From IMG/VR virus record IMGVR_UViG_3300023174_000039, positions 186,001-250,000 of that record: a DNA stretch of 64,000 nt; one strand, written 5' to 3'. A program made the translations under genes and the position numbers. This document shows positions 30,293 through 51,509 of this stretch, one piece after another; position 1 is the first letter of the stretch, and each line of letters opens with the position of its first letter. The notes beneath the pieces are model-generated. The model ran no database searches. It saw nothing but the letters and a program-made list of their open reading frames with translations, and was not told where the DNA came from.

Positions 30293-30593
30293 GTTAGTTG
30301 ACAACGGTAAAGTGGCAGTGCTATACAGCCCGGGATTCGGTGCAGGCTGGAGTACTTGGAATCGTGGAGTGCCAGAAATTGTATTTGATCCTGCTATTGT
30401 GAAATTTATAGAACATGATCAAATGGCAGAGTTAAACACTTATGTTACCCTCAAGTATCCAGGACTCTACACAGGTGGCATGACAAGCCTGTCAGTGGCT
30501 TGGGTATCAGTGGGTACCGAGTTTCGAATCAAAGAATACGACGGTGCCGAAAGCATTGAACTAAAAGAAGAAATAAATTGGATAACCGCATGA
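30273..30593 (+). CDS. Conserved phage hypothetical protein
   Basis: VAVLYSPGFGAGWSTW; FRIKEYDGAESI. Confidence 0.78.
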   Translation: MTKNIAKLVDNGKVAVLYSPGFGAGWSTWNRGVPEIVFDPAIVKFIEHDQMAELNTYVTLKYPGLYTGGMTSLSVAWVSVGTEFRIKEYDGAESIELKEEINWITA

Positions 30594-30712
30594 AACGAGC
30601 AGACTTTGGCCGACTGGCCTGGACATCTTACAGATATGAGGCTCTTGCGCCCGAGATCACAGACTTCACAGAAGCTCGGGCTGTGATTGCTTACATCAAG
30701 TCCTTGTTATGA
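30590..30712 (+). CDS. 40-aa hypothetical protein
   Basis: Below the track cutoff; ATGA overlaps on both sides. Confidence 0.55.
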   Translation: MKRADFGRLAWTSYRYEALAPEITDFTEARAVIAYIKSLL

Positions 30713-30834
30713 AAGTGATTGTAAACTCCGCCGAGACCGTTGTACTTCCTTGGGAAGAAGGTCTCCTAGAATGGTTGCAGGAACACTATCCTTATAGTCG
30801 GTATCAGGTGGTAGAGATCCGCCAAATGGGTTGA
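30709..30834 (+). CDS. 41-aa hypothetical protein
   Basis: MKVIVNSAETVVLPWEEGLLEWLQEHYPYSRYQVVEIRQMG; ATGA overlap. Confidence 0.55.
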   Translation: MKVIVNSAETVVLPWEEGLLEWLQEHYPYSRYQVVEIRQMG

Positions 30835-30859
30835 CTATAAATAGTTTTCCTTGTACAAT
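30831..30859 (+). promoter_or_regulatory. Sigma70 promoter with nested TATAAATA, upstream of tRNAs
   Basis: TTGACT 30831-36, TATAAATA 30836-43, TACAAT 30854-59. Confidence 0.72.
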
Positions 30860-30867
30860 AAAACAAT

Positions 30868-30942
30868 GCGCCTATAGCTTAATGGTAAAGCAGGGGACTC
30901 ATAATCCCTTGAGTCGTGGTTCGATCCCACGTGGGCGCACCA
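30868..30942 (+). tRNA. tRNA with CAT anticodon, probably tRNA-Ile2 (lysidine type)
   Basis: Cloverleaf with GGGGA-ctCATaa-TCCCT and encoded CCA; anticodon arm resembles Ile2. Confidence 0.85.
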
Positions 30943-30947
30943 TTTTT

Positions 30948-31022
30948 CTGGCCATAGTATAATGGATAATACAGTAGCCTTCTAAGCTATCAATCTAGGT
31001 TCGATTCCTAGTGGCCGGACCA
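30948..31022 (+). tRNA. tRNA-Arg(TCT)
   Basis: GTAGC-ctTCTaa-GCTAT; TTCGA T-loop; CCA. Confidence 0.92.
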
Positions 31023-31056
31023 AGCTCTGTTAAATAACAGACACTAGGAGAGCACT

Positions 31057-31218
31057 ATGGCTTCATTTATCACAGCAGTAAAATCGGCATTGGAAAAAAA
31101 GCATGCCGCACAACATCCTGATGCAAAACCCGTCAAAGGTTCCAAGTCAGTTAAAAAACCAACAGCACCACAGCCAGTGGGTAAACCTGTTAAAAAGGTC
31201 ACTGGCCGGGGCGGATAA
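31057..31218 (+). CDS. 53-aa Lys/Pro-rich basic protein between tRNAs
   Basis: TAAATA at 31031, AGGAG SD; MASFITAVKSALEKKHAAQHPDAKPVKGSKSVKKPTAPQPVGKPVKKVTGRGG. Confidence 0.7.
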   Translation: MASFITAVKSALEKKHAAQHPDAKPVKGSKSVKKPTAPQPVGKPVKKVTGRGG

Positions 31219-31225
31219 CGCACAA

Positions 31226-31309
31226 GCGAGTGTGGGGGAATAGGTAGACCCAGCAGACTTAAAATCTGCCGCGTAATGCGTACCGGTTCGATTCCGGTCA
31301 CTCGTACCA
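31226..31309 (+). tRNA. tRNA-Leu(TAA)
   Basis: GCAGA-ctTAAaa-TCTGC; variable arm; CCA. Confidence 0.93.
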
Positions 31310-31318
31310 TTTTATATC

Positions 31319-31876
31319 ATGACCAAGATAAACAGTAGCCCCGATCGACACACCTTTCAAAAAGAAGGTTATGTTAAACGCTGTGAGGAACAAGGCAAGT
31401 TGCCTAATCCTGACTATGTTGAAATGTACAAAACCTGGCGTGAACAAGATGCGGCAAATCTTGTGGATCCCGAGTGGCAAAACAACAACATGGAGTACGA
31501 CCTGCGTAGTACCAAATGGATCTGCGACAAAGTCAAGGCCAGCGACAGCTATGCTCAAAATCTGTATGCAGCCATGTGCAACATGCAATTTGTAAAAAAC
31601 GAAGTATGGCCTTTGCTCAAGGACCAACGCTGGAGTGCCAGTTGGCGCAGTGCTGGAGGCATTGTGGCTGACATGCATGAACAAGGTGACTATATTGACT
31701 GGTACTGTTCGGGCATTGGTGGCATGATGGGAGGCGGTAGTGAGTCCAGTCCAGCAACAGAAGCAGCCTTGCTGGCCAGAAAAAACTATGTGCCAGAGGG
31801 CACTGTCACTGATGAGATCCGAGCAGACTTATTTCAACTGGGATGGATTCCAAAAGAGTGGGACAGTGATGAGTGA
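31319..31876 (+). CDS. Conserved phage hypothetical protein
   Basis: YAQNLYAAMCN...WSASWRSAGGIVADM...YIDWYCSG. Confidence 0.8.
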   Translation: MTKINSSPDRHTFQKEGYVKRCEEQGKLPNPDYVEMYKTWREQDAANLVDPEWQNNNMEYDLRSTKWICDKVKASDSYAQNLYAAMCNMQFVKNEVWPLLKDQRWSASWRSAGGIVADMHEQGDYIDWYCSGIGGMMGGGSESSPATEAALLARKNYVPEGTVTDEIRADLFQLGWIPKEWDSDE

Positions 31877-32507
31877 CCATACCTATTATAAAAAACTCAA
31901 CTTGCCGGCTAACCCGTTAAAGGACAGCCGAGCGGTGTCTCAGATGTCGATCACTGGTGTTTATGACATAGTAGAACCCCATGCGATTCTAACAGATGAA
32001 ATACTTTCTATCTTTGACAGTCTTGAGTTGCGTGTGAAAATGGTTGCATTGTTTGGTCGTATGGACGGTACTTCTACCAAACATGATAGACTGATACATG
32101 CTGACCTTTACAAAAACAATGCTGATGTGCGTGGATGGTCAAAACTGGTAGCCGGCGTGAATTGGGAGATCGAAGGGTCGCACAATGTTTTTTATTGGTA
32201 TGACATGTCAAAACTTGACGAGCACTGGCCGCCTGTAGTGGGATCAGGTACATCAAAGTATGATTTGTTGAATGGCATACACTACGGACAACGTGGCAAT
32301 CACGGAGTTTATCCCGAGCAGGCAGTGGTACTAGAACACACCACCATTGACGGTCCCACACTAGTGAGAACTGACATTCCACACTCGACATTGTATCACA
32401 ATCCCAACACATACCGAGTGGGGGTCAGTGTTAGATTTTTTGAAGAAGACTTTGATCACAATTGGGAAACAGTATTGGCAAAGTTTCAACCAGTGTTTCT
32501 CAAATAA
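31869..32507 (+). CDS. Hypothetical protein
   Basis: Likely start MSDHTYY at 31869, overlapping the upstream stop. Confidence 0.68.
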   Translation: MSDHTYYKKLNLPANPLKDSRAVSQMSITGVYDIVEPHAILTDEILSIFDSLELRVKMVALFGRMDGTSTKHDRLIHADLYKNNADVRGWSKLVAGVNWEIEGSHNVFYWYDMSKLDEHWPPVVGSGTSKYDLLNGIHYGQRGNHGVYPEQAVVLEHTTIDGPTLVRTDIPHSTLYHNPNTYRVGVSVRFFEEDFDHNWETVLAKFQPVFLK

Positions 32508-32510
32508 ATA

Positions 32511-32580
32511 AGAGTTAAGACTGTATGAAGTTGACAGAAAAGGATTCAAGACCCGGGGGCAGTTCCCGGCAGGTCCACCA
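32511..32580 (+). ncRNA. ssrA: Permuted tmRNA, acceptor (3') piece; 5' end approximate
   Basis: GATTCAA-GAC-CCGGG-GGCAGTT-CCCGG-CAGGTCC-ACCA gives the T arm and 3' acceptor strand. TAAATA promoter at 32505-10. Confidence 0.9.
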
Positions 32581-32603
32581 TAAGGAGATTGAATAAATAC
32601 TAG

Positions 32604-32909
32604 ATGCGAATAAAAGAACTGACTGAATCATTTAACAAGTGCTATGATATGGCATGTAAAATGTATGATTACGCAAAGGCTAAAAATTTGCATCCTAAAC
32701 TAATACAAGTAGCAGATTATAAAGGCGATGGTTCCGGTGCTGATAAACGCTGGCAAAAACTACCGCAAAGAGTGTGGCAACATTATGTCACAGTAATCGG
32801 CAATAAAGTCTACGATCCAACTGCTAAACAGTTTGGTCCTGACAACGATACTGAATATAGTTTAGAAAGATTAGATGCTGACTGGGGACAACAGTATCTA
32901 ATTAAATAA
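32604..32909 (+). CDS. 101-aa protein encoded inside the tmRNA intervening segment; possible Cys-His-Asp (papain/transglutaminase-like) fold
   Basis: KCYDMA...QHYVTVIGNKVYDPTAKQF; TAAGGAG at 32581 and TAAATA at 32594-99. Confidence 0.75.
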   Translation: MRIKELTESFNKCYDMACKMYDYAKAKNLHPKLIQVADYKGDGSGADKRWQKLPQRVWQHYVTVIGNKVYDPTAKQFGPDNDTEYSLERLDADWGQQYLIK

Positions 32910-32922
32910 GTCTTTTTATGAT

Positions 32923-33105
32923 GGGCCTGACATAGATATCGATTGGGTCAAGAGTACGGAAATGGACAGTCCGGCAATGTAGAAGCCGTTAGGGTTGGGG
33001 GAACTTGGCCGAAGACACAAAAACCGTAAATGCAAACGACGAACAGTTCGCTTTAGCCGCCTAAACTCGGCTTAGGGTAGGAAATACCTCGTAACAGAAA
33101 CCACC
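32923..33105 (+). ncRNA. ssrA: Permuted tmRNA, coding (5') piece with tag ANDEQFALAA
   Basis: GGGCCTG pairs with CAGGTCC and includes G3:U70. GTAAAT-GCA resume site. Tag ORF 33032-33064 is GCA AAC GAC GAA CAG TTC GCT TTA GCC GCC TAA. Confidence 0.92.
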
Positions 33106-33133
33106 AAAAAAGGGCACTTTGGTGCCCTTTTTC
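33106..33133 (+). terminator. Intrinsic terminator, bidirectional
   Basis: AAAAAAGGGCAC-tttg-GTGCCCTTTTTT. Confidence 0.9.
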
Positions 33134-33192
33134 TTTGACTTCTTAGTATAAACGCTATATACTAGTTGATATTCATTTTATAAGGAAAAATA

Positions 33193-34086
33193 ATGACAAC
33201 AACAATTACAATCAAGGACAAAGCAGTAAACACAACATATCAAAATGTCACAGGGTTGACAGGTGGCTCAGGCGACGGCGCCGCATTTGATGTTACCAAG
33301 ACCAATGGTGTTTATTCCGTTGTGTTAGACGCATTGGCAGCCAGTGCTGGCCGCAACTATGTGGCAGGTGATACTATTACTCTTGCTGGCACAGCACTGG
33401 GTGGTACAAGTGCCAACAACTTGATCGTCACAGTGGGCACAGTTGGTACTGCCGGTAAGATTGCTACATTTGGTGTAGTGGGCACAGGCCGTGTTGGCGA
33501 TGGCACAGTAGACGTACAAGTTGATGTTACTGGTACCAGTGGCATTGACACTTATACTGTAGGTGGTGCCAGTACAGAGTACACAACAACCAAGACCGCA
33601 AGTGCAGTTACATTGGCCAGTTCACTGGTCAGCAATTTAGAAATTAAACTTGCTGATCACGAGCGTGTGGTGTTCACAGACAAAGCCATTGCATATGATG
33701 CCGCAGGCCGTGCAGGTGATGTATATGCATTGTTGGCAGCCGCACTTGGTGTTAGTGATGTTACTCGAGCCTACGAAGGCATTGGCATCTATCTTGCAGA
33801 TGCAGGTTGGACCAACAAACAATTGGCCACTGCATTGTTGGCCACTGATACATACAAGGCCGACGCCGGTGGTGTCAGTGACGAAACATTCATCAAGCAT
33901 GTTTATAAAAATGTCACAGGTACCACTGCCACAATCGCAGATGTTACTGCATTAACAAACTGGATGACTGCCAACAAGTACAGTCAAGCAGATGTACTGG
34001 TCATTGCCAGCGAATTGCCAGCATTTGAAACAGCAATTGGCCTGGTTGGATTGGCAACAACTGGCATTGAATATACTCCTGTATAA
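33193..34086 (+). CDS. S-layer/RTX-associated-like protein with a C-terminal DUF4214-like domain
   Basis: Thr/Gly/Ala/Val-rich beta region, then DHERVVFTDKAIAYDAAGRAGDVYALL...SDETFIKHVYKNV. Own promoter TTGACT 33136/TATACT 33159 and TAAGGA SD. Confidence 0.72.
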   Translation: MTTTITIKDKAVNTTYQNVTGLTGGSGDGAAFDVTKTNGVYSVVLDALAASAGRNYVAGDTITLAGTALGGTSANNLIVTVGTVGTAGKIATFGVVGTGRVGDGTVDVQVDVTGTSGIDTYTVGGASTEYTTTKTASAVTLASSLVSNLEIKLADHERVVFTDKAIAYDAAGRAGDVYALLAAALGVSDVTRAYEGIGIYLADAGWTNKQLATALLATDTYKADAGGVSDETFIKHVYKNVTGTTATIADVTALTNWMTANKYSQADVLVIASELPAFETAIGLVGLATTGIEYTPV

Positions 34087-34102
34087 TACAACCGGCCCAG
34101 AC

Positions 34103-34129
34103 AAAAAGGCTGTTTTCACAGCCTTTTTT
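34103..34129 (+). terminator. Intrinsic terminator
   Basis: AAAAAGGCTGT-tttc-ACAGCCTTTTT. Confidence 0.9.
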
Positions 34130-34202
34130 GTTGATTAAATGTAAACATCGCTATATAATATAGATTGACTACCAAGTCAATTTAAACAAGGAAATTTAAA
34201 AA

Positions 34203-34742
34203 ATGAAAAAATTTGCATTCGCATCACTCTTGGCTTTGGCCTCTTTCGCTTCTTCTGCACAGTATGTGTCAGTTGATGTGGACCATGTAAAGACCAGTCG
34301 TGGTCAGGAAAGTTCTGCACAGTACATCCGTGCTGGCAAAACCATCAGTGGCATTGACTACGGTCTCCAAAGCCGCACAGGTGTTGGCAACAAAGGTGGC
34401 ATGTTCAACAGCCTAGAAGTCACAGCTGGCAGCAAACTGGGTTCTTTCGCGCCGTTCGTGGGCGTGGGCTATGACAATGGCTTTAACGGTTCACCTGCTG
34501 GTTCATACACATATGGCTTGTTGGGCGTAACAACTGGTGCCAAGGTTGGTCCAGGTTTTGCATTTGGTGGTGTCAAGACTCGACTGGGTTCTAGTGCCAA
34601 AGTAGAAACAAAACAAACAGTGGCGTTTGGTACTTACAGTTTACCCATTGCCAAGAACCTTGCACTCAACGTGAATGCAAGCAAGAGCTACCAAGACATC
34701 AAAGAAACAGCTTATGGTGTTGGCCTAGCGTTTGGGTTTTAA
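34203..34742 (+). CDS. Small outer-membrane beta-barrel (porin-like) protein
   Basis: Sec signal MKKFAFASLLALASFASSA; alternating beta strands; C-terminal YGVGLAFGF fits a BAM signal ending in Phe. Confidence 0.8.
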   Translation: MKKFAFASLLALASFASSAQYVSVDVDHVKTSRGQESSAQYIRAGKTISGIDYGLQSRTGVGNKGGMFNSLEVTAGSKLGSFAPFVGVGYDNGFNGSPAGSYTYGLLGVTTGAKVGPGFAFGGVKTRLGSSAKVETKQTVAFGTYSLPIAKNLALNVNASKSYQDIKETAYGVGLAFGF

Positions 34743-34768
34743 ATGTAATACTTAATAGTTACATTTAC

Positions 34769-34795
34769 AAAAAACCCGCACTAGGCGGGTTTTTT
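34769..34795 (+). terminator. Intrinsic terminator
   Basis: AAAAAACCCGC-actag-GCGGGTTTTTT. Confidence 0.9.
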
Positions 34796-34803
34796 ATTGG
34801 CGG

Positions 34804-34930
34804 TTGACTGAATATTCTGAATTTGCTACAATAGAAACAAGTTAAGAAATACAGCAAAGTTTGCAAAGCCCTTATAAAGAAAAAGGACTTTGCAAAACAA
34901 GTTGACAAGTAAATCACAAGATGTTATACT
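34804..34930 (+). promoter_or_regulatory. Tandem sigma70 promoters of the main tRNA/ncRNA operon
   Basis: TTGACT 34804/TACAAT 34827 and TTGACA 34902/TATACT 34925, both with 17-nt spacers. Confidence 0.8.
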
Positions 34931-35017
34931 AGAGACTAGTTAGGAAATAGTAGATCGAGACTGTTTCAAGAGTTCGTTAAAAATTCAATTTTGTATAGTA
35001 CTCGGATCCAATCCGGG

Positions 35018-35260
35018 CACTATATGTAAGCACATTGGGTTACCGCCCCAGTAGGTAATTTGACAAGAGATCAATCTGTGGCCGCACAGACTCTTCCAAG
35101 TTACATGAAAGATGGAAACGAAGCCGCAAGGTGGATACTGTATAATCGCGCTGGACCAGGTAGGCCTGTAATGTGTTTGACAAACAAGTCCGTGGACGAC
35201 ACGGTAGGGCAGAAAAAACTGCGATCTTTGTCCGACATCCTGATGTGTTTTCATATAGTG
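35018..35260 (+). ncRNA. Structured spacer RNA A
   Basis: Terminal helix CACTATATG/CATATAGTG plus AAGCACATT/GATGTGTTT; internal hairpins such as TCTGTG-gccg-CACAGA. Confidence 0.6.
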
Positions 35261-35267
35261 ATTTTTT

Positions 35268-35343
35268 GGTCTTAAAGTGTTCATGGACGCACGATGGCTT
35301 GTCACGCCATAAGAGTGGGGATCGTTACCCCCTAAGACCGCCA
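35268..35343 (+). tRNA. tRNA-Asp(GTC)
   Basis: ATGGC-ttGTCac-GCCAT; atypical T-loop ATCGTTA; CCA. Confidence 0.88.
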
Positions 35344-35349
35344 ACATTT

Positions 35350-35412
35350 GAGAGCCACTACGCCTGGATACTTCCCTCGCAAGAGGCACTAGGTCCTGCA
35401 ACCGTGGCTCTC
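35350..35412 (+). ncRNA. Small structured spacer B
   Basis: GAGAGCCAC/GTGGCTCTC 9-bp closing helix; CCTC-gcaa-GAGG hairpin. Confidence 0.5.
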
Positions 35413-35420
35413 CCTTATTT

Positions 35421-35496
35421 GCTCGGTTCATCTAGCGGTCTAGGATAGTGCCCTTTCACGGCATTCACACGGGTTCGAATCCCGTACCGAGCTCCA
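35421..35496 (+). tRNA. tRNA-Glu(TTC)
   Basis: GTGCC-ctTTCac-GGCAT; CCA. Confidence 0.93.
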
Positions 35497-35501
35497 CACA
35501 T

Positions 35502-35586
35502 GGAGATGCCGCCGCAATGGTGTGGCAGGGGACTGTAACTCCTCCGACTTCGGTCACGATAGGTTCGATCCCTATCATCTCCACCA
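35502..35586 (+). tRNA. tRNA-Tyr(GTA)
   Basis: ctGTAac loop; variable arm GAC-ttcg-GTC; CCA. Confidence 0.88.
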
Positions 35587-35590
35587 GAAC

Positions 35591-35778
35591 GTTCCGGGTG
35601 TCTCCGGATAGTCAGACCCTGACGATGAGAAGTAGTGTGACAACTACGGGTGGTAGTCTTCAAACCCAAAGGCCGCTAGCAATGCGAGAACGGTCCCTGT
35701 CGGGAAGCGGGTGGAAGGAGTATGTGATGGATACGATAGCGTCGTATCTTGATACTCTACAATTACCGCCGGGGGATG
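35591..35778 (+). ncRNA. GC-rich structured spacer RNA C
   Basis: Hairpins TCCGG/CCGGA, GTCAG/TGAC and GTAGT/ACTAC; nested GCGGGT..GGAGTAT..GATACGA/TCGTATC..ATACTCT..ACCGC. Confidence 0.6.
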
Positions 35779-35791
35779 CAGAGCATGTTTG

Positions 35792-35949
35792 TTTTTATAG
35801 TCAAGCATCGATAAAGGTATCGTGACAGGACGCTGTCACTATTCGGGCCTAACTGTGCGAGGAACAGGTCCTGACATAACTGCCATTCGCTTGTCAGAGC
35901 TAGCTACTTTGTTGACAAATCGGCATCTCTCGGTGCTTGACTATAAAAA
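35792..35949 (+). ncRNA. Structured spacer RNA D
   Basis: 20-bp terminal helix TTTTTATAGTCAAGCATCGA/TCGGTGCTTGACTATAAAAA with one G-U pair. Confidence 0.65.
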
Positions 35950-35952
35950 TAC

Positions 35953-36030
35953 GCACAGGTGGCAGAGTGGTCCAATGCACGGGATTGCAAATCCTGAAAG
36001 CCGTGAGTTCAAATCTCACCCTGTGCTCCA
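35953..36030 (+). tRNA. tRNA-Cys(GCA)
   Basis: ttGCAaa loop; U discriminator; CCA. Confidence 0.9.
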
Positions 36031-36034
36031 GTTT

Positions 36035-36228
36035 TTATATTGATAACAGTGTGTTAAAAACTCTTTGACCAAGGGCCCAACTGCTAGGGAATTATTGATC
36101 CAAAAACCGCTGAGCGGACGAAAGTTGCGGCGGACTGCTAGTCACAGTCACACATGTTTTTGGAAGGATGCTGGTGTAGCAATACAGCAGGGACCTTTAA
36201 ACACACAGCAGTATTGTTATCAATATAA
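36035..36228 (+). ncRNA. Structured spacer RNA E
   Basis: 14-bp perfect helix TTATATTGATAACA/TGTTATCAATATAA, then GTGTGTTAAA/TTTAAACACAC. Confidence 0.65.
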
Positions 36229-36235
36229 GTACTAC

Positions 36236-36310
36236 CGCGGGGTGGAGAAGTAGTAACTCATCAGGCTCATAACCTGAAGATCGGCGGTGCGAATCCGTCC
36301 CCCGCATCCA
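36236..36310 (+). tRNA. Initiator-like tRNA-Met(CAT)
   Basis: C1:A72 mismatch; CGCGGGG 5' end; TCAGG-ctCATaa-CCTGA. Confidence 0.85.
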
Positions 36311-36326
36311 ATTTTACCATTTGTGG

Positions 36327-36355
36327 TTGACTTTCAATCATAAATAAACTACAAT
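36327..36355 (+). promoter_or_regulatory. Sigma70 promoter with nested TAAATA
   Basis: TTGACT 36327-32, 17 nt spacer, TACAAT 36350-55; TAAATA at 36341-46. Confidence 0.75.
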
Positions 36356-36365
36356 AGAAACTAAC

Positions 36366-36479
36366 ATGAAAACACAAAACTATTCATTTGCTAAGCCATC
36401 CATGTTTGTCCAGCCTTCAGCCTGGACGCATGCGAACGGTCGCGTGAATAGCATTCCAGGAGATCCGGGGTCCGTGTAA
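36366..36479 (+). CDS. Putative 37-aa leader peptide
   Basis: MKTQNYSFAKPSMFVQPSAWTHANGRVNSIPGDPGSV; starts about 10 nt after the -10 box and precedes the terminator/antiterminator. Confidence 0.55.
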   Translation: MKTQNYSFAKPSMFVQPSAWTHANGRVNSIPGDPGSV

Positions 36480-36504
36480 AGTACATTAGTATTCTACTCA
36501 AAGG

Positions 36505-36538
36505 ACCCTGGAACTAAACACTCCAGGGTTTTTCTTTT
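36505..36538 (+). terminator. Intrinsic terminator with an overlapping antiterminator
   Basis: ACCCTGGA/TCCAGGGT plus TTTTCTTTT; alternative pairing GGGGTCC 36467-73 with GGACCCT 36503-09. Confidence 0.82.
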
Positions 36539-36629
36539 AGTGCAATGGCAACGAGAGCCGGCATCACTCAAAACTGCAAATGGGCGGCCTGTAGGATGGA
36601 ACACTATTTGTAGTGTGAAAAATTACAGC

Positions 36630-36685
36630 GTATTAAAGCATTCTTTAAGAACAGGCAGCCTAAGTATTTTAGAGTGCTTTAATAC
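36630..36685 (+). ncRNA. Long hairpin spacer F
   Basis: 15-bp stem GTATTAAAGCATTCT/AGAGTGCTTTAATAC. Confidence 0.55.
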
Positions 36686-36708
36686 ACACATTCGTAAGAG
36701 TGTGTCGG

Positions 36709-36782
36709 GTATCTCTGGTGTAATGGCAGCACCGCGGTCTCCAAAACCGTCAGTCAAGGTTCGAGTCCTTGGAGGTACGCCA
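36709..36782 (+). tRNA. tRNA-Trp(CCA)
   Basis: GCGGT-ctCCAaa-ACCGT; CCA end. Confidence 0.92.
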
Positions 36783-36787
36783 CACAT

Positions 36788-36861
36788 GGGCTGGTAGTTA
36801 AATGGGATAACGGTGGCTTTGCAAGCCTCAGTTGGGAGTTCGATTCTCCCTCGGTCCACCA
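36788..36861 (+). tRNA. tRNA-Ala(TGC)
   Basis: ttTGCaa loop; G3:U70. Confidence 0.92.
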
Positions 36862-36869
36862 AATTAAAT

Positions 36870-36898
36870 TTGACACAACCGTGTGTCTGCTATATAAT
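36870..36898 (+). promoter_or_regulatory. Sigma70 promoter
   Basis: TTGACA-17-TATAAT. Confidence 0.82.
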
Positions 36899-36905
36899 AG
36901 CATGT

Positions 36906-36995
36906 CGAGAGCGGGCAGGACGGTAATGCAGCGGATTGCTAATCCGTAGACCGTAGTAATACGGTCACTGGGTTCGACTCCCAGGCTCTCGGCCA
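36906..36995 (+). tRNA. tRNA-Ser(GCT)
   Basis: GCGGA-ttGCTaa-TCCGT; long variable arm. Confidence 0.92.
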
Positions 36996-37006
36996 CATCA
37001 ATCAAT

Positions 37007-37082
37007 TCCCTAGTAGCTCAGTCGGTAGAGTAGCAGACTGTTAATCTGTTGGTCACACGTTCGAACCGTGTCTGGGGAGCCA
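37007..37082 (+). tRNA. tRNA-Asn(GTT)
   Basis: GCAGA-ctGTTaa-TCTGT. Confidence 0.93.
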
Positions 37083-37087
37083 AACAA

Positions 37088-37163
37088 GCCCTTATAGCTC
37101 AGCTGGTAGAGCAACTGATTTGTAATCAGTAGGTCCCGTGTTCGAATCATGGTGGGGGCACCA
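37088..37163 (+). tRNA. tRNA-Thr(TGT)
   Basis: ACTGA-ttTGTaa-TCAGT. Confidence 0.93.
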
Positions 37164-37166
37164 ATC

Positions 37167-37242
37167 GCTCTCATAGCTCTAGTGGTAGAGCATACCCTTG
37201 GTAAGGGTAAGGTCACGTGTTCGAATCACGTTGAGAGCACCA
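37167..37242 (+). tRNA. tRNA-Thr(GGT)
   Basis: TACCC-ttGGTaa-GGGTA. Confidence 0.93.
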
Positions 37243-37251
37243 ATTCATTTC

Positions 37252-37328
37252 AGCTTCATAGCTCAGTTGGTTAGAGCACCGTGTTGATAACGCGGGGGTC
37301 CTGTGTTCGAGTCACAGTGAAGCTACCA
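37252..37328 (+). tRNA. tRNA-Ile(GAT)
   Basis: CCGTG-ttGATaa-CGCGG. Confidence 0.93.
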
Positions 37329-37379
37329 AATTTTTAAAGGAGAGTCCCTATGGACAGTGATAAGAGTGGGAAGATTTGT

Positions 37380-37455
37380 GGGACGTTAGCTCAGTTGGTA
37401 GAGCAGTAGACTTTTAATCTATTGGTCATTGGTTCAAATCCAATACGTCCTACCA
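37380..37455 (+). tRNA. tRNA-Lys(TTT)
   Basis: GTAGA-ctTTTaa-TCTAT. Confidence 0.93.
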
Positions 37456-37524
37456 TATAAAAACACACTTGGTATGCCCATAGCATACAGAGACATCAGA
37501 AACGTGAGTGTGTTTCTATATGGT
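37452..37524 (+). ncRNA. Structured spacer G linking tRNA-Lys and tRNA-His
   Basis: ACCATATA/TATATGGT plus AAACACACT/AGTGTGTTT. Confidence 0.6.
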
Positions 37525-37598
37525 GCTTGTCGTCAAGCGGTTAAGACCTCGGATTGTGATTCCGATATACGTGGGTTCGAATCCCATCAAGCACCCCA
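37522..37598 (+). tRNA. tRNA-His(GTG)
   Basis: G-1:C73; TCGGA-ttGTGat-TCCGA. Confidence 0.93.
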
Positions 37599-37599
37599 T

Positions 37600-37674
37600 G
37601 GATGTATAGCACAGCGGTAGTGCATCTCCTTCATACGGAGCAGGTCAGTAGTTCAAATCTACTTACATCCACCA
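37600..37674 (+). tRNA. tRNA with CAT anticodon, probably elongator Met
   Basis: CTCC-ttCATac-GGAG; fully paired acceptor stem; CCA. Confidence 0.82.
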
Positions 37675-37685
37675 TAACATTTTGT

Positions 37686-37759
37686 TGGGGGTTAGTTAAA
37701 TGGTATAACATCGGATTTTGATTCCGAGATCACAAGTTCGATTCTTGTACCCTCTGCCA
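37686..37759 (+). tRNA. tRNA-Gln(TTG)
   Basis: TCGGA-ttTTGat-TCCGA; unpaired 1:72. Confidence 0.9.
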
Positions 37760-37764
37760 CATAT

Positions 37765-37841
37765 CGGTCCTTAACTCAATTGGATAGAGTGCCAGTCTTC
37801 GAAACTGGAAGTTGGGAGTTCGACTCTCTCAGGACCGGCCA
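37765..37841 (+). tRNA. tRNA-Arg(TCG)
   Basis: CCAGT-ctTCGaa-ACTGG. Confidence 0.92.
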
Positions 37842-37880
37842 GTTTTTAACCTTGTATAATACTAGCCTATAAATATTTCC

Positions 37881-38642
37881 ATGAAGAAAGCACTTATACT
37901 TGGATGTAGTCATGCCGCTGGTTCAGAAATGATTGATGAGCCAGAAATTGATTTGTTAAACTATGGCAAAGACTACTATGGATACTGTATGAGTTATCCC
38001 TCACAGTTGGCACAATTGTTGGGGTACCATCCCGTAAATCATGCTATCCCTGGTGGTAGCAATGATGCAATGTTTAGAATATTTGAATCGTTTGTCAACC
38101 CTTACAAGAACTTTGAAAAGCCTGACATTGTGTTTGTATGTTGGACCGGTGGCGAACGTACCGAGGTATGGGACTTTGAAGAAGGCAACTGGATTGGCCT
38201 TGCTGGCGGTAAAACTAATTTTACAAAAACAATTCCTGATAGTGTTATACGGGAAGGGAAAATTATTCCTGAACCTATTATTAACGCCGATAACATTGTT
38301 ACATATCAAAAACAATGGATCACTCATCATGCTGATCGCTGGTGGGGTCGATTGAACAAGTTAAAAAACATACTGGCACTGAACACCATGGCAGCTCAAG
38401 AGAAGATCCCGGTTATTAATCTTGATAGTTTTGGTGCAGTGCAAGAATACACATTTCCCGACACAGTATATCGTCCCTTGGGACAAACTGAGTTTTGTAA
38501 CTGGGCGGTCGAGCGTGGATTCAACAACACCAAGTCGGGACATTACTTTTTGCAAGCACACAGAAGTTTTGCAAACTTCATTGCCAAAAAAGTTGATCCA
38601 AAGTATCATGCAGATAACATCGGAAAGATCATAACAGAATAA
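37881..38642 (+). CDS. SGNH/GDSL-like protein inside the tRNA array
   Basis: LILGCSH, NHAIPGGSN, SGHYFLQAH; TATAAATA ends 5 nt before the ATG. Confidence 0.7.
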   Translation: MKKALILGCSHAAGSEMIDEPEIDLLNYGKDYYGYCMSYPSQLAQLLGYHPVNHAIPGGSNDAMFRIFESFVNPYKNFEKPDIVFVCWTGGERTEVWDFEEGNWIGLAGGKTNFTKTIPDSVIREGKIIPEPIINADNIVTYQKQWITHHADRWWGRLNKLKNILALNTMAAQEKIPVINLDSFGAVQEYTFPDTVYRPLGQTEFCNWAVERGFNNTKSGHYFLQAHRSFANFIAKKVDPKYHADNIGKIITE

Positions 38643-38646
38643 TAAT

Positions 38647-38720
38647 GCGGGGCTCGTATAGTGGTAATACCTTAGCCTTCCAAGCTAAAGCGAGGGGTTC
38701 GATTCCCCTGCCCCGCTCCA
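38647..38720 (+). tRNA. tRNA-Gly(TCC)
   Basis: TTAGC-ctTCCaa-GCTAA. Confidence 0.93.
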
Positions 38721-38726
38721 CTTATT

Positions 38727-38802
38727 GCGCGGTTAACTCAGTCGGTAGAGTTCTTGCCTTACACGCAGGCTGTCGGCGGTTCGAGCCCGTCACCGCGCAC
38801 CA
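38727..38802 (+). tRNA. tRNA-Val(TAC)
   Basis: CTTGC-ctTACac-GCAGG. Confidence 0.93.
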
Positions 38803-38808
38803 CACATT

Positions 38809-38885
38809 CGGAGTGTAGCACAGCCTGGTAGTGCGCCTGGTTTGGGACCAGGAGGTCGTAGGTTCGAATCCTACTATTCCGACCA
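38809..38885 (+). tRNA. tRNA-Pro(TGG)
   Basis: CCTGG-ttTGGga-CCAGG. Confidence 0.93.
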
Positions 38886-38892
38886 CCTTTTT

Positions 38893-38984
38893 GGAAGATG
38901 ATGCAGTGGGGTTGGTCCCGCGACTGGCCTTGAAAACCAGGTTCTCTTAACAGGGATGGGGTTCGACTCCTCCGTCTTCCGCCA
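38893..38984 (+). tRNA. tRNA-Ser(TGA)
   Basis: ctTGAaa loop; long variable arm; G discriminator. Confidence 0.88.
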
Positions 38985-39028
38985 AATTAATTGACACCGC
39001 AGATGTTGTGTGTTATTATGATAGTTAG

Positions 39029-39113
39029 GCCCAGGTGGCGAAATTGGTAGACGCACCAGATTTAGGTTCTGGCGTAGAAATATGTGTCGGTTCGAGTCCG
39101 ACCCTGGGCACCA
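39029..39113 (+). tRNA. tRNA-Leu(TAG)
   Basis: CCAGA-ttTAGgt-TCTGG; variable arm. Confidence 0.93.
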
Positions 39114-39116
39114 TTT

Positions 39117-39283
39117 TGCAAACAAAAAAACGTATAGGGGTAAAACCCCAGTGGCTCTGCGCAGTGATGTGCATCTGCTGGTTCAGTTGTCTGGATGAGA
39201 GGTCCTGATTGTTGCCGGTGTAGAGTTAATCTATTAACGATTAGCGTACAAATACCCGCCCTAGCGAAACCGGTTTGTTTGCA
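39117..39283 (+). ncRNA. Structured spacer RNA H after the last tRNA
   Basis: TGCAAACAAA/TTTGTTTGCA 10-bp terminal helix; GGGGT-aaa-ACCCC hairpin. Confidence 0.55.
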
Positions 39284-39336
39284 TTTTTAACACAATTGTA
39301 ATCTCAGCTTCAATAAATACCCATAGAAAGCAATGT

Positions 39337-39816
39337 ATGAAAAAACTAGATCTCAACAAGGTCAAACAATTTATTGAAGCACAAGGTCCAGAAACAAAAA
39401 TCTATCTCGGGTGTGACAGCGAAAGACTCAGGGTCAACAATGTATGGCATGCTGACTATGTGTTGGCTATTGTGGTGCACATTAACGGCAACAACGGATG
39501 TAAAATCTTTGGGGAAGTACACAGAGAACGAGTGTATGATCAACGAGAATCTAAACCTGCCATGCGCTTGATGACCGAGGTGTACAAAGTGTCCGAGCTG
39601 TATCTAAAATTAGCCGAAGTGCTAGAAGGACGCAACGTAGAGGTTCACTTGGACATCAATCCAGATGAAATGCACGGTTCAAGCTGTGTTATTAGTCAAG
39701 CAATAGGATATATCAAAGGCACTTGCAATGTTGTACCTTTTGTGAAACCCAATGCATTTGCTGCCAGCTACGCCGCAGACAGGTTTAAAAGCCTAAGAAC
39801 AGCACAACACAGCTAG
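39337..39816 (+). CDS. YkuK/DUF458 RNase H-like protein
   Basis: IYLGCDS...RLMTEVYK...VEVHLDIN. Confidence 0.85.
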   Translation: MKKLDLNKVKQFIEAQGPETKIYLGCDSERLRVNNVWHADYVLAIVVHINGNNGCKIFGEVHRERVYDQRESKPAMRLMTEVYKVSELYLKLAEVLEGRNVEVHLDINPDEMHGSSCVISQAIGYIKGTCNVVPFVKPNAFAASYAADRFKSLRTAQHS

Positions 39817-50213: not shown

Positions 50214-51509
50214 ATGACATCTACTACTGCAACAAAAGAAGACAAGAAGAAGTTTGCCAACCTTCTAGGCAAAACAGATCCCAAACTTGACCGAGAAGTA
50301 CGAGAGATGCTTATCACTGCTCGTGTAGGCCTGTTGCTCAAGGCCAGTTTCTTTGGTAACTTGGCAACACGGTTGAAACTTGTTAACGCAGACGAGTGGT
50401 GCTCTACTGCCGCAACAGATGGCAGAAACTTCTATTACAATAGCCGCTTCATTAAAATGTTGCGTCCCAAAGAAATCGAATTCTTGTTTGGGCACGAGGT
50501 GCTACATTGTGTATATGACCACTTTGGACGTAGAGGTGAGCGAGATCACCAGTTGTTTAACATTGCCAATGACTATTGTGTAAACGCAGATTTGATCAAG
50601 CACCGTGTGGGTGAGAAGATCACTACAGTGCCTTGTTTGCACAATCCCAAGTATGATGGCATGAGCTCGGAAGAGATCTACGATATCTTGTACGAGAAGG
50701 CAGAGAAAATTGATGTGGGCAAGTTGTTGGATCAGATGATCGACGAGCACTTAGACGGCGAAGGCGATCCCGACGGTGATGGCGACAGTGATGGTGAGGA
50801 CGGCGACAAAAAAGGCAAGGGCCGACCAGTACTGACCCCAGAAGAGCGTCAGCAAATTAAAGACGAGATTAAGGAAGCCATGTTGGCGGCTGCCGCTACA
50901 GTAGACGGCGCAGGTAACTTGCCCGCAGGCGTTAAGCGTCTTATTAAAGAGCTCACAGAGCCCCAGATGAACTGGAGAGAACTGCTCCGTATGCAATTAG
51001 AGAGCACTATTAAGAGTGACTACACCTGGATGCGAGCAAGCCGCAAGGGCTGGCACATGGATGCTGTCATGCCTGGCATGAAGGTAGAGCCCATGATTGA
51101 TATTGCTGTGGCACTGGACGCTTCCGGCTCCATTAGCGAGACCATGCTAAAGGACTTCTTGGGTGAGATACAGGGTATCATGGACTCGTTCCCTGCATAC
51201 AAAATTCACGTTATTACTTTTGATACAGAGGCATATAACCCTGCACAATACGACAGTGACAACTTGGAAGACATTTGCGACTACGAGGTCAAAGGTGGCG
51301 GTGGTACAGACTTTGACTGTGTGTTTAACTACTTAAAGGCAGAGGAAATTGAGCCCAAGCGTCTTGTAGTGTTTACAGATGGCTACCCGTTTGGTAGCTG
51401 GGGAGACCCAGCCTATGCAGATACAGTTTGGATCTTGCATGGCACAAGAACTATTGAGCCGCCATTTGGGCAGTATGCGTATTATGGAGAGGACTTGGAT
51501 GACCATTGA
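50214..51509 (+). CDS. Metallopeptidase-like plus VWA-like protein (DUF2201 type)
   Basis: TAATDG, HEVLH (HEXXH), DASGS MIDAS, GGGGTDF, FTDG; promoter TTGACC 50159/TATAAT 50182. Confidence 0.9.
   Translation: MTSTTATKEDKKKFANLLGKTDPKLDREVREMLITARVGLLLKASFFGNLATRLKLVNADEWCSTAATDGRNFYYNSRFIKMLRPKEIEFLFGHEVLHCVYDHFGRRGERDHQLFNIANDYCVNADLIKHRVGEKITTVPCLHNPKYDGMSSEEIYDILYEKAEKIDVGKLLDQMIDEHLDGEGDPDGDGDSDGEDGDKKGKGRPVLTPEERQQIKDEIKEAMLAAAATVDGAGNLPAGVKRLIKELTEPQMNWRELLRMQLESTIKSDYTWMRASRKGWHMDAVMPGMKVEPMIDIAVALDASGSISETMLKDFLGEIQGIMDSFPAYKIHVITFDTEAYNPAQYDSDNLEDICDYEVKGGGGTDFDCVFNYLKAEEIEPKRLVVFTDGYPFGSWGDPAYADTVWILHGTRTIEPPFGQYAYYGEDLDDH

What the first reader, a model, noticed from the sequence alone, without database searches (positions are those of the whole stretch)
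35018..39283. tRNA array interleaved with structured spacer RNAs closed by long terminal helices
Seen: at least eight non-tRNA, non-coding spacers (A-H) in the tRNA operon fold back on themselves. Six have 9-20-bp closing helices, several AT-rich and built from similar words (TATA..., ACAC/GTGT). Their inner sequences differ from each other. Inference: tRNA processing would excise each as a stable, end-protected RNA, so the tRNA operon may act as a release cassette for several unknown phage ncRNAs such as decoys, sponges or anti-defence RNAs.
Basis: partly seen in the sequence, partly recalled or inferred. Interest (0 to 1): 0.8.

Follow-up and report, generated by a model that had tools for sequence, protein, structure and literature searches.

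The report
Structured RNA modules inside phage tRNA array
Several gaps between the tRNA genes of this uncultivated freshwater jumbo phage hold conserved, folded non-coding RNAs of unknown function, belonging to families that no database lists and that recur in at least a hundred related phage contigs.

Summary
The long fold-back helices are real: 4 long inverted repeats against 0.5 expected in shuffles.

Five spacers are conserved structured RNAs with strong covariation:
- S2, 35350-35412
- S3a, 35587-35790
- S3b, 35791-35952
- S4, 36031-36235
- S5b, 36539-36707

Across 13-69 distinct homologues each, 91-99% of cells stay paired. S1 (35018-35260) and S11 (39117-39283) keep invariant closing helices around variable or weakly sampled interiors.

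None matches Rfam 15, and the five spacer stretches tested (S1, S3a-S5b) have no match in 50,697 cultured phage records. All families occur only inside tRNA arrays of uncultivated, mostly freshwater, phage contigs. They lie on the tRNA strand, usually 0-6 nt from a tRNA end, and in shuffled order. In four metatranscriptomes S3a and the S1 interior reach depths of hundreds to thousands, while the ORF embedded in the array reads about 0.

Other spacers are different things:
- σ70-like promoters at 36870 and 38991
- a missed tRNA-Ser(UGA) at 38893-38983
- a DUF6071 ORF
- a plain inter-tRNA hairpin (S8)
- a leaderless 37-codon ORF whose 3' end is complementary to a downstream terminator (S5a), probably a translation-sensing attenuator

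Release by tRNA processing is well supported but not shown. No evidence bears on a decoy or anti-defence role.

The parts
34902..34930 (+). σ70-type promoter P1 (TTGACA-17-TATACT) ahead of S1 and tRNA-Asp
   Evidence: 11 of 12 consensus positions
35018..35260 (+). An 18-bp closing helix, CACTATATGTAAGCACAT / ATGTGTTTTCATATAGTG, around a 207-nt interior. It ends 5-8 nt before tRNA-Asp or tRNA-Glu.
   Evidence: The helix is invariant in 8 aligned homologues, while the interior is replaced by unrelated sequence in 4 of them. 74 distinct copies in the census. RNA contig depth over 35051-35201 is 953 (X3) and 2689 (X6).
35350..35412 (+). S2. A 63-nt rod-like RNA with a 9-bp closing helix, invariant internal loops and a GNRA-type tip. 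It fills a slot 4-6 nt after one tRNA and 6 nt before the next.
   Evidence: A9: 18 sequences, 96.9% paired, 10 of 18 pairs changed on both sides. Boundaries.
35587..35790 (+). S3a. A 204-nt multi-helix RNA that starts 0-2 nt after the CCA of a tRNA, mostly tRNA-Tyr. It is the most widespread module.
   Evidence: CM R2: 99 hits, 69 distinct, 97.6% paired, 21 of 43 pairs changed on both sides; slid controls 34-52%. At least 120 IMG/VR contigs. RNA depth 159-4008.
35791..35952 (+). S3b. A 162-nt RNA closed by a 21-bp AU-rich helix that is nearly invariant in sequence. It ends 1-3 nt before tRNA-Cys or tRNA-Asp.
   Evidence: A6: 26 sequences, 99.4% paired, 12 of 41 pairs changed on both sides, all inner hairpins covary. 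35 contigs match the pattern exactly.
36031..36235 (+). S4. A 205-nt RNA whose closing helix varies freely in sequence but stays paired.
   Evidence: A8: 13 sequences, 91% paired, 26 of 38 pairs changed on both sides, including 10 of 10 in the closing helix.
36327..36355 (+). Promoter P2 (TTGACT-17-TACAAT). The ATG of the small ORF lies 6-9 nt after the -10 in homologues, so the mRNA would be leaderless.
36366..36479 (+). S5a ORF, 37 codons. Its last ~8 codons (36455-36473) are complementary to both arms of the terminator.
   Evidence: Open in 29 of 30 homologues. Weak third-position bias. Helix 36465-36473 with 36503-36511 is 87.8% paired with compensatory changes.
36503..36538 (+). Intrinsic terminator hairpin plus U-run. 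It is mutually exclusive with the pairing to the ORF 3' end.
   Evidence: 99.2% paired in 34 sequences. Energies: -30.1 kcal/mol for the antiterminated fold, -16.3 for the terminator when the ORF end is masked.
36539..36707 (+). S5b. A 169-nt RNA with six helices and invariant stretches (AACGAGG loop, AAACGGGCGGCC). It sits at the head of a run of tRNAs.
   Evidence: CM R1: 82 hits of 91-186 bits, 63 distinct, 98.7% paired, 24 of 33 pairs changed on both sides. 38 of 63 copies have a tRNA within 15 nt downstream.
36870..36898 (+). Promoter P3, a perfect σ70 consensus. It fills the Ala-Ser spacer.
   Evidence: 12 of 12; 86-91% identical in relatives
37452..37524 (+). S8. An 18-bp hairpin that pairs the CCA end of tRNA-Lys with the first bases of tRNA-His. 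The window copy has a 32-nt insertion in the loop.
   Evidence: Relatives keep the helix with a short loop. The interior has no homologue.
37881..38642 (+). DUF6071 (SGNH/GDSL-like) ORF embedded in the array
   Evidence: RNA contig depth about 0.
38893..38983 (+). Probable tRNA-Ser(UGA) with a long variable arm, missed by ARAGORN
   Evidence: Rfam tRNA-Sec 36.9 bits, E 1.5e-4. It aligns with the ARAGORN-called tRNA-Ser(tga) of L027 and has the same anticodon loop. 89-99% identical in relatives.
38991..39019 (+). Promoter P4 ahead of tRNA-Leu
   Evidence: 11 of 12
39117..39288 (+). Trailer RNA after the last tRNA. A 9-bp outer plus 6-bp inner closing helix is followed by a T-run, so it may also act as the terminator of the array.
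   Evidence: A12: 5 sequences, closing helix invariant, 6 pairs changed on both sides.

Best explanation
The tRNA region is a set of σ70-driven transcription units. In them, several positions that a tRNA could occupy are taken by independently folding, conserved RNAs: S2, S3a, S3b, S4 and S5b, plus S1 and S11 at the two ends.

Inferred release. Each module is transcribed with its neighbouring tRNAs. RNase P cutting at the 5' end of the downstream tRNA (1-6 nt away) would make the module's 3' end. Endonucleolytic 3' maturation of the upstream tRNA (0-6 nt away) would make its 5' end. The closing helix brings the two ends together, which shields them from exonucleases and from 5'-end-dependent RNase E.

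Inferred function. The released RNAs accumulate and act in trans. The invariant internal loops flanked by covarying helices suggest that each binds a specific protein or RNA partner. The partner is unknown.

Other elements work differently:
- S5a is most likely a leaderless leader-peptide attenuator. When a ribosome reaches the end of the 37-codon ORF it masks the antiterminator and the terminator forms. When translation lags, transcription reads through into S5b and the tRNAs.
- S8 is a plain inter-tRNA hairpin, probably a processing or insulating helix.

Shown: the structures, their conservation and covariation, their placement, and their presence in RNA libraries. Inferred: the cleavage enzymes, the stability, and trans action.
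For: Structure and conservation. Cells paired 91-99%, against 27-52% when the partners are slid. 10-26 pairs per family are changed on both sides. Five of these six counts had 0 of 500 shuffles reaching the observed value on four or all of the five measures; the S2 count did so on three.

Not in a known family: Rfam at gathering score and at E ≤ 10.

Restricted to phage tRNA arrays. Of 23 genome contigs pattern matches, only one 13-kb MAG contig is a true S5b. No match in cultured phage records.

Boundaries at tRNA ends.

Same strand in 265 of 265 loci, with variable order, so the modules are independent.

G·U pairs that turn into G-C, which fits RNA on the + strand.

RNA libraries: depth 159-4008 over S3a and up to 2689 over the S1 interior, against 0-0.9 over the ORF in the same array. 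That argues against DNA carry-over. The contigs also carry the same compensatory hairpin variant as the phage relatives. S3a/S3b words are held by metatranscriptomes from more than 10 studies.

Attenuator.
Against: - No 5' or 3' ends were mapped. Read laying used assembled contigs, which have no strand, sum depth over relatives, and give no discrete ends (table 6 empty).
- S3b, S4 and S5b have only modest RNA depth.
- Two closing helices (S1, S3b) are invariant in sequence. That fits a recognition or processing site, or a DNA-level signal, as well as it fits end protection.
- Homologues were partly recruited by exact-match patterns taken from conserved segments, and the CM-made alignments lean towards the model structure.
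- The S5a ORF lacks a run of regulatory codons, and its codon-position bias is weak.
- No partner protein or target was found.
Confidence: 0.7

Rival explanations
1. The spacers act only in cis, as processing or insulating elements. The long closing helices would be RNase III (or RNase E-resistant) structures that separate neighbouring tRNAs and help them fold independently. This would resemble the stems that flank 16S and 23S rRNA, or the T7 early RNase III sites. The excised pieces would be by-products.
For: - S8 is exactly this kind of element. Its helix pairs the tRNA-Lys CCA end with the tRNA-His 5' end, and relatives have only a short loop.
- The S1 and S3b helices are 18-21 bp and nearly invariant in sequence, while the S1 interior is swapped between phages.
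- The S11 helix is followed by a T-run.
Against: - The interiors of S2, S3a, S3b, S4 and S5b have invariant loops flanked by covarying helices over 13-69 distinct sequences. A mere spacer needs none of this.
- Most tRNAs in the same array are separated by only 1-11 nt with no such element, so the array does not need them for processing.
- S3a has no long closing helix, yet it is the most abundant and the most widespread.
Confidence: 0.15
2. The modules are cis-regulatory leaders, riboswitch-like or attenuator-like, that set how much of the downstream tRNA run is transcribed. They would not be trans-acting RNAs.
For: - S5a has a conserved ORF, antiterminator and terminator arrangement.
- S5b always heads a run of tRNAs and follows that terminator.
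- S1 lies between a promoter and the first tRNA and has a possible alternative pairing.
Against: - S2, S3a, S3b and S4 sit between tRNAs with no terminator or expression platform next to them.
- Their order relative to the tRNAs is shuffled.
- The same module precedes different tRNAs.
Confidence: 0.1
3. The spacers are decayed tRNA genes, small protein genes, or scars or terminal inverted repeats of small mobile elements that inserted between tRNAs.
For: - One 'spacer' is indeed a tRNA (S10).
- One holds a small ORF.
- Relatives have radical-SAM and other ORFs inserted exactly at the same boundaries.
- S1 has conserved inverted-repeat ends around a variable interior.
Against: - Neither ARAGORN nor the Rfam tRNA model scores S1-S5b, even at E ≤ 10.
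- Each helix word occurs only as its own pair in the 64-kb window, so these are not multi-copy elements.
- Compensatory changes and G·U pairs turning into G-C show selection on RNA pairing.
- Indels are not in multiples of three, and no ORF is kept in S2-S4 or S5b.
Confidence: 0.05

Closest known systems
Phage T4 tRNA cluster with its two small stable RNAs (species 1 and 2, genes rnaC/rnaD). This is from my own knowledge of the T4 literature; no paper I read states it.
   Same: Non-tRNA stable RNAs of unknown function are encoded among phage tRNA genes, transcribed with them, and cut out of the tRNA precursors by host enzymes.
   Different: There are six or seven distinct families here rather than two. 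Several have 18-21-bp closing helices. Sequence relatedness could not be tested because no T4 RNA C/D model or sequence was available. A 1.1-kb stretch of these spacers found no T4-like match in the phage collection.
GOLLD and ROOL RNAs (Rfam RF01998, RF03087)
   Same: Covariation-supported phage or prophage RNAs of unknown function, 'often near tRNA islands'. GOLLD sometimes has tRNAs in its linker (PMC5737381; bioRxiv 10.1101/2024.12.08.627333).
   Different: GOLLD and ROOL are single RNAs of about 580-800 nt or more. These are 63-205-nt modules that are shuffled independently. No Rfam match even at E ≤ 10.
Leader-peptide transcription attenuators (trp, his, leu, pheL type; PMC3082878 for pheL)
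   Same: For S5a only: a short ORF, a terminator directly downstream, and an alternative pairing between the ORF and the terminator arms that a translating ribosome would prevent.
   Different: - There is no run of codons for one amino acid.
- The ORF is leaderless.
- It is a two-state rather than a four-segment design.
- It controls an RNA and tRNAs rather than biosynthetic genes.
- It is in a phage.
RNase III processing stems (rRNA operon 16S/23S stems; T7 early R sites)
   Same: Long helices formed by the sequences flanking an RNA that is to be released from a polycistronic precursor.
   Different: Cleavage is untested. Some helices are only 9 bp. The interiors are themselves conserved RNAs.
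Bacterial and phage Y RNA-like RNAs (YrlA, RF02553), and HDV-like or hammerhead ribozymes next to phage tRNAs
   Same: Small structured RNAs found beside phage tRNAs. Y RNAs also have a long terminal helix.
   Different: The YrlA model hit only the real tRNAs, at 24.9 bits or less against a gathering score of 69. No ribozyme family was hit.

Membership tests
Any Rfam 15 family | Covariance-model score at or above the gathering threshold | tested here: not met
   cmscan at gathering score over the whole window and at E ≤ 10 over 30500-39500. The spacers S1-S5b, S8 and S11 received only chance-level hits. The best was tmRNA_permuted at 22.7 bits (gathering score 47), partly lying over the tRNA-Tyr T arm.
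tRNA (RF00005 / ARAGORN) | Cloverleaf with acceptor, D, anticodon and T arms | tested here: not met
   Not met for S1-S5b, S8 and S11. Met in part for 38893-38983: tRNA-Sec model 36.9 bits against a gathering score of 47, anticodon loop CTTGAAA, T loop GGTTCGACTCC, and alignment to a called tRNA-Ser(tga).
Phage tRNA-cluster stable RNAs (T4 species 1/2 type) | Encoded between tRNA genes on the same strand | tested here: met
   Modules lie 0-6 nt from tRNA ends, and 265 of 265 loci have all modules on one strand.
Phage tRNA-cluster stable RNAs (T4 species 1/2 type) | Accumulates as a discrete stable RNA processed from the tRNA precursor | tested here: inconclusive
   RNA-library contigs cover S3a and S1 deeply and the embedded ORF not at all. 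Some contigs bridge tRNA-Tyr to S3a and S3a to S3b. No ends could be mapped.
Phage tRNA-cluster stable RNAs (T4 species 1/2 type) | Sequence or structure homology to T4 RNA C/D | not tested
blastn of 35587-36708 against the phage collection gave only tRNA-Met matches.
GOLLD / ROOL | Match to the family model; one large multi-junction RNA of 580-800 nt or more | tested here: not met
   No hit. Modules are 63-205 nt long and change order between phages. Only the genomic context, a tRNA island in a phage, is shared.
Leader-peptide attenuator (S5a only) | Short ORF immediately upstream of an intrinsic terminator | tested here: met
   ORF 36366-36479, open in 29 of 30 homologues. Terminator 36503-36538, 99.2% paired.
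Leader-peptide attenuator (S5a only) | Conserved alternative pairing between the ORF region and the terminator arm | tested here: met
   36465-36473 with 36503-36511: 87.8% paired, slid controls 14-60%, compensatory GTCC/GGAC, GTCT/AGAC and GTTC/GAAC. The MFE fold is the antiterminated form, -30.1 against -16.3 kcal/mol.
Leader-peptide attenuator (S5a only) | Run of regulatory codons for the sensed amino acid | tested here: not met
   The peptides have no repeated residue run. There is only one invariant Trp.
RNase III processing stem | Helix of about 20 bp or more flanking the released RNA, cleaved by RNase III | not testable with these tools
   The length criterion is met by S3b (21 bp), S4 (about 19-25 bp with bulges), S1 (18 bp) and S8 (18 bp). 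Cleavage needs an enzyme assay.
MITE-like mobile element | Many dispersed copies sharing terminal inverted repeats | tested here: not met
   The arm words of S1 and S3b occur only as their own pair in the 64-kb window. In other contigs they occur only inside tRNA arrays.

The most novel reading that the evidence does not exclude
S1, S2 and S3a, often with S3b, S4 and S5b, form a co-inherited suite of phage RNAs delivered through the tRNA-processing pathway. They would act together on the host, for example by titrating or redirecting an RNA-binding protein, an RNase, or a tRNA-targeting defence. Alongside them, a leaderless mini-ORF attenuator (S5a) would switch on part of the phage tRNA supply only when host translation falters. 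Together this would be a new regulatory layer that couples phage tRNA supply and ncRNA release to the state of host translation.
Probability: 0.15. Interest if true: 0.85.

Novelty: new member of a known kind. Interest (0 to 1): 0.62.

Why it matters
Phage tRNA clusters are usually read as codon-usage or anti-defence tRNA supplies, and the DNA between the tRNAs is ignored. Here that DNA holds at least five RNA families with covariation as strong as that of accepted Rfam families. They are widespread in uncultivated freshwater phages (S3a in at least 120 IMG/VR contigs), and at least two of the spacer RNAs are abundant in environmental RNA libraries.

This provides ready-made alignments for new Rfam entries. 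It gives a defined set of candidate trans-acting phage RNAs to test. It also gives a testable candidate for translation-coupled control of a phage tRNA operon. Finally, it extends the old and still unexplained T4 observation of stable RNAs inside tRNA clusters, and the GOLLD/ROOL link to tRNA islands, to a new and diverse set of small RNAs.

Tried and rejected
- **Rfam.** Searches at gathering score and at E ≤ 10 found nothing for the spacers.
- **Cultured phage collection.** megablast of the whole region and blastn of 35587-36708 and of S1 returned only tRNA matches or none.
- **PHROGs and Pfam on neighbouring ORFs.** Found only DUF6071, an RNaseH-like PF04308 protein and a family B DNA polymerase. 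No reverse transcriptase, Cas protein, Ro protein or other obvious RNA partner turned up, so I dropped the retron, CRISPR and Y-RNA ideas.
- **Genome-contig scan with the S5b core.** 23 matches, about what chance predicts. Only one is a true S5b, on a 13-kb contig binned with a Neisseriaceae MAG.
- **MITE idea.** The arm words are single-copy in the window.
- **Hammerhead reading of GAUGAG in S3a.** The flanking core (CUGAUGA ... GAAA) is absent (by eye).
- **Promoter reading of the 3' arms.** TATAGT and TATAAA sit 6-8 nt before the tRNA 5' end, but only a weak -35 is present and it is not conserved. Not excluded for a T4-type late promoter.
- **S5a as an ordinary protein gene.** Codon-position differences of 4490 / 4395 / 5131 show little third-position excess. 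The conserved C-terminal residues coincide with the nucleotides that pair with the terminator.
- **IMG/VR csRNA catalogue (PMC10690425).** Its supplement is not held, so I could not check whether it already lists these motifs.

Full report
**Source and setting.** The window is part of a 331,654-bp uncultivated viral contig (IMGVR_UViG_3300023174_000039; L001 is identical to the window). Its family B DNA polymerase is only 42-50% identical to those of Atu_ph07, Phosso and Rak2-like jumbo phages. No cultured phage shares the spacer DNA. ARAGORN finds 21 tRNAs at 35268-39113 and 3 more at 30868-31309, all on the + strand.

**Observation check.** They exceed chance: 4 long inverted repeats in 35000-39300 against 0.54 ± 0.72 in 300 dinucleotide shuffles. 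MFE z-scores run from -3.4 to -7.0 for S2, S3, S4, S5 and S8.

I number the spacers S1 to S11.

**What each spacer is.**
- S1 (35018-35260), S2 (35350-35412), S3a (35587-35790), S3b (35791-35952), S4 (36031-36235), S5b (36539-36707) and S11 (39117-39283) are non-coding structured elements.
- 36862-36905 is a perfect σ70 promoter.
- 38886-39028 holds a tRNA-Ser(UGA)-type gene that ARAGORN missed (tRNA-Sec model 36.9 bits; same anticodon loop as a called tRNA-Ser(tga) in L027), followed by another promoter.
- 37842-38646 is a DUF6071/SGNH-like ORF.
- 36311-36538 (S5a) is a promoter, a 37-codon ORF and a terminator.
- S8 (37452-37524) is an 18-bp hairpin joining the CCA end of tRNA-Lys to the start of tRNA-His. 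Relatives keep the helix with only a short loop.
- S7 (37329-37379) shows no structure signal (z +0.26).

**Relatives.** The DUF6071 protein recovered syntenic tRNA arrays from IMG/VR (L002-L006) and from lake metagenomes (L008-L044). Exact-pattern scans of IMG/VR gave these counts:

| Core pattern | Contigs |
|---|---|
| S5b | 67 |
| S3b | 35 |
| S2 | 60 |
| S4 | 62 (partly chance) |
| S1 3' arm | 44 |

An HMM census over all 344 fetched loci counted distinct sequences: S1 74, S2 52, S3a 97, S3b 54, S4 37, S5b 93 and S11 10.

**Covariation.**

| Module | Sequences | Cells paired | Pairs changed on both sides |
|---|---|---|---|
| S5b (CM R1) | 82 hits of 91-186 bits, 63 distinct | 98.7% | 24 of 33 |
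| S3a (CM R2) | 99 hits, 69 distinct | 97.6% | 21 of 43 |
| S3b | 26 | 99.4% | 12 of 41 |
| S4 | 13 | 91.0% | 26 of 38 |
| S2 | 18 | 96.9% | 10 of 18 |

- For S5b, no shuffle out of 500 reached the observed values, and slid controls gave 27-52% paired.
- In S3b the inner hairpins covary, while the 21-bp closing helix is almost invariant in sequence. It shows one C-G to U-A change and one U·G to C-G change, and the latter makes sense only for RNA of the + strand.
- In S4 all 10 pairs of the closing helix are changed on both sides.
- S1 shows the opposite pattern. Its 18-bp closing helix is invariant in 8 sequences, while the interior is replaced by unrelated sequence in four of them.
- S11 has few homologues and limited covariation.

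Caveats: part of the recruitment used exact words from conserved segments, and the CM-made alignments lean towards the model. The slid-partner controls and the MAFFT-only alignments (A6-A9) give the same answer.

**Placement.** Module edges coincide with tRNA edges:
- S2 lies 4-6 nt after one tRNA in 16 of 17 copies and 6-7 nt before the next in 12 of 17.
- S3a starts 0-2 nt after a CCA, mostly of tRNA-Tyr.
- S3b ends 1-3 nt before tRNA-Cys or tRNA-Asp in 21 of 26 cases.
- S4 often abuts tRNAs on both sides.
- S1 ends 5-8 nt before tRNA-Asp or tRNA-Glu.
- S5b has a tRNA of varying identity within 15 nt downstream in 38 of 63 distinct copies.

All modules in a locus are on one strand (265 of 265 loci). 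Their order varies: S1>S2>S3a is commonest, and S5b>S1... and S1>S3b>S2>S3a also occur. They are therefore independent cassettes that occupy tRNA-like slots. In relatives, radical-SAM and other ORFs are inserted at exactly these junctions.

**RNA evidence.** Contigs of four metatranscriptomes were laid on 34900-39400 at 88% likeness or more.

| Region | Word depth in X1 / X2 / X3 / X6 |
|---|---|
| S3a, 35655-35805 | 406 / 159 / 1635 / 4008 |
| S1 interior, 35051-35201 | 2 / 16 / 953 / 2689 |
| DUF6071 ORF, 37920-38523 | 0 / 0.4-0.9 / 0 / 0 |

- The zero over the ORF argues against DNA carry-over.
- The contigs carry the same compensatory hairpin variant (35613/14 with 35620/21) as the phage relatives.
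- Some contigs bridge tRNA-Tyr to S3a and S3a to S3b, as precursors would.
- S3b, S4 and S5 have lower depth (about 2-100).
- Contigs carry no strand or end information and sum depth over relatives. This shows transcription and accumulation, not excision.
- Words of S3a and S3b are held by RNA runs from more than 10 studies.

**S5a as an attenuator.**
- The ORF is open in 29 of 30 homologues although the sequences diverge, and the other two frames hold 79 and 34 stop codons in total.
- Its ATG lies 6-9 nt after the -10 element, so the mRNA would be leaderless.
- Third-position excess is weak.
- The conserved peptide tail (NSIPGDPGS) is encoded by the nucleotides that pair with both arms of the terminator. 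The helix 36465-36473 with 36503-36511 is 87.8% paired and shows compensatory changes. The terminator is 99.2% paired.
- The unconstrained fold of 36455-36538 is the antiterminated form, at -30.1 kcal/mol. With the ORF end masked as a terminating ribosome would mask it, the terminator forms at -16.3 kcal/mol.

The simplest reading is a switch. Completed translation gives termination. Lagging translation gives read-through into S5b and the tRNAs. I put this at about 0.5. No published precedent for such control of a phage tRNA operon turned up.

**Mechanism and rivals.**
- Best explanation (0.7): conserved RNAs co-transcribed with tRNAs, freed by RNase P and tRNA 3'-end maturation, stabilised by terminal helices, and acting in trans on an unknown partner.
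- Pure processing-aid rival (0.15): fits S8 and perhaps the invariant S1 and S3b helices. It does not explain the conserved interiors, nor why most tRNAs in the array need no such element.
- Cis-regulatory rival (0.1): fits S5a, and possibly S5b and S1.
- Scars, pseudo-tRNAs or small genes (0.05): excluded for S2-S5b.

No evidence bears on decoy, sponge or anti-defence roles.

**Comparison with known systems.**
- The kind is known. T4 encodes two stable RNAs of unknown function within its tRNA cluster (own knowledge).
- GOLLD and ROOL are phage or prophage RNAs 'often located nearby to tRNAs' (PMC5737381; bioRxiv 10.1101/2024.12.08.627333).
- The families here match no Rfam model. They are much smaller than GOLLD and ROOL, there are several of them, and they are modular.
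- A catalogue of 8,495 IMG/VR candidate RNAs exists (PMC10690425) and may already contain some of them. I could not check this.

**Host hint.** A two-piece tmRNA-like gene with the tag ANDEQFALAA lies upstream. The only genome-collection hit for S5b is on a contig binned with a Neisseriaceae MAG. Both point to a betaproteobacterial host.

**Verdict.** These are new RNA families of a known kind, and their function is open.

Noticed in passing
window 32513-32591 and 32916-33108 (tag ORF 33032-33064): A two-piece (permuted) tmRNA-like gene encoding the tag ANDEQFALAA*. It is homologous to the tmRNAs that ARAGORN calls in relatives L027 and L012. ARAGORN misses it in the window, and it scores below the Rfam gathering threshold (beta_tmRNA 57.9 against 84 bits).
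   Followed up: partly
L003 706-3131, 4271-5389(-), 6848-8017; L006 502-2924, 3774-4316, 6848-8017: Relatives carry one to four radical-SAM ORFs (one with a SPASM domain) and a PNP_UDP_1-like ORF. These are inserted exactly at tRNA/module junctions of the array, and the window lacks them at those sites. Together with the small conserved ORFs nearby, this could point to peptide or RNA modification.
   Followed up: partly
window 31057-31218: A 53-aa lysine-rich ORF with a Shine-Dalgarno sequence fills the spacer between tRNA-Arg(TCT) and tRNA-Leu(TAA). The spacer is conserved in six distinct relatives.
   Followed up: partly
window 37881-38642: A DUF6071 (SGNH/GDSL-like hydrolase) gene sits inside the tRNA array in nearly every relative found (36-81% identity over 40-odd loci). 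RNA-library contigs do not cover it, although its RNA neighbours are covered deeply.
   Followed up: partly
window 39337-39816: An RNaseH-like (PF04308, phrog_11311) ORF directly follows the last module of the array.
   Followed up: no
window 34993-35026: The word GTATAGT upstream of S1 repeats the 3'-arm word. It could pair with the 5' arm (CACTATA) around a small hairpin (TCGGATCCAATCCGGG). That would be an alternative to the closing helix and so a possible switch.
   Followed up: no
window 36423-36425 (Trp codon of the S5a ORF) and 36709-36782 (tRNA-Trp): The leader ORF has one invariant Trp codon, and the commonest tRNA right after S5b is tRNA-Trp (12 of 38). However, the Trp codon also forms part of a conserved CCAG/CTGG hairpin, so the link may be coincidental.
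   Followed up: partly
window 36513-36521: The loop of the S5a terminator hairpin (ACUAAA[C/A]AC) is nearly invariant across 34 homologues, which is unusual for a plain terminator loop.
   Followed up: no
window 50214-51509: An HNH endonuclease ORF (phrog_1314, E 8e-108) lies elsewhere in the window.
   Followed up: no
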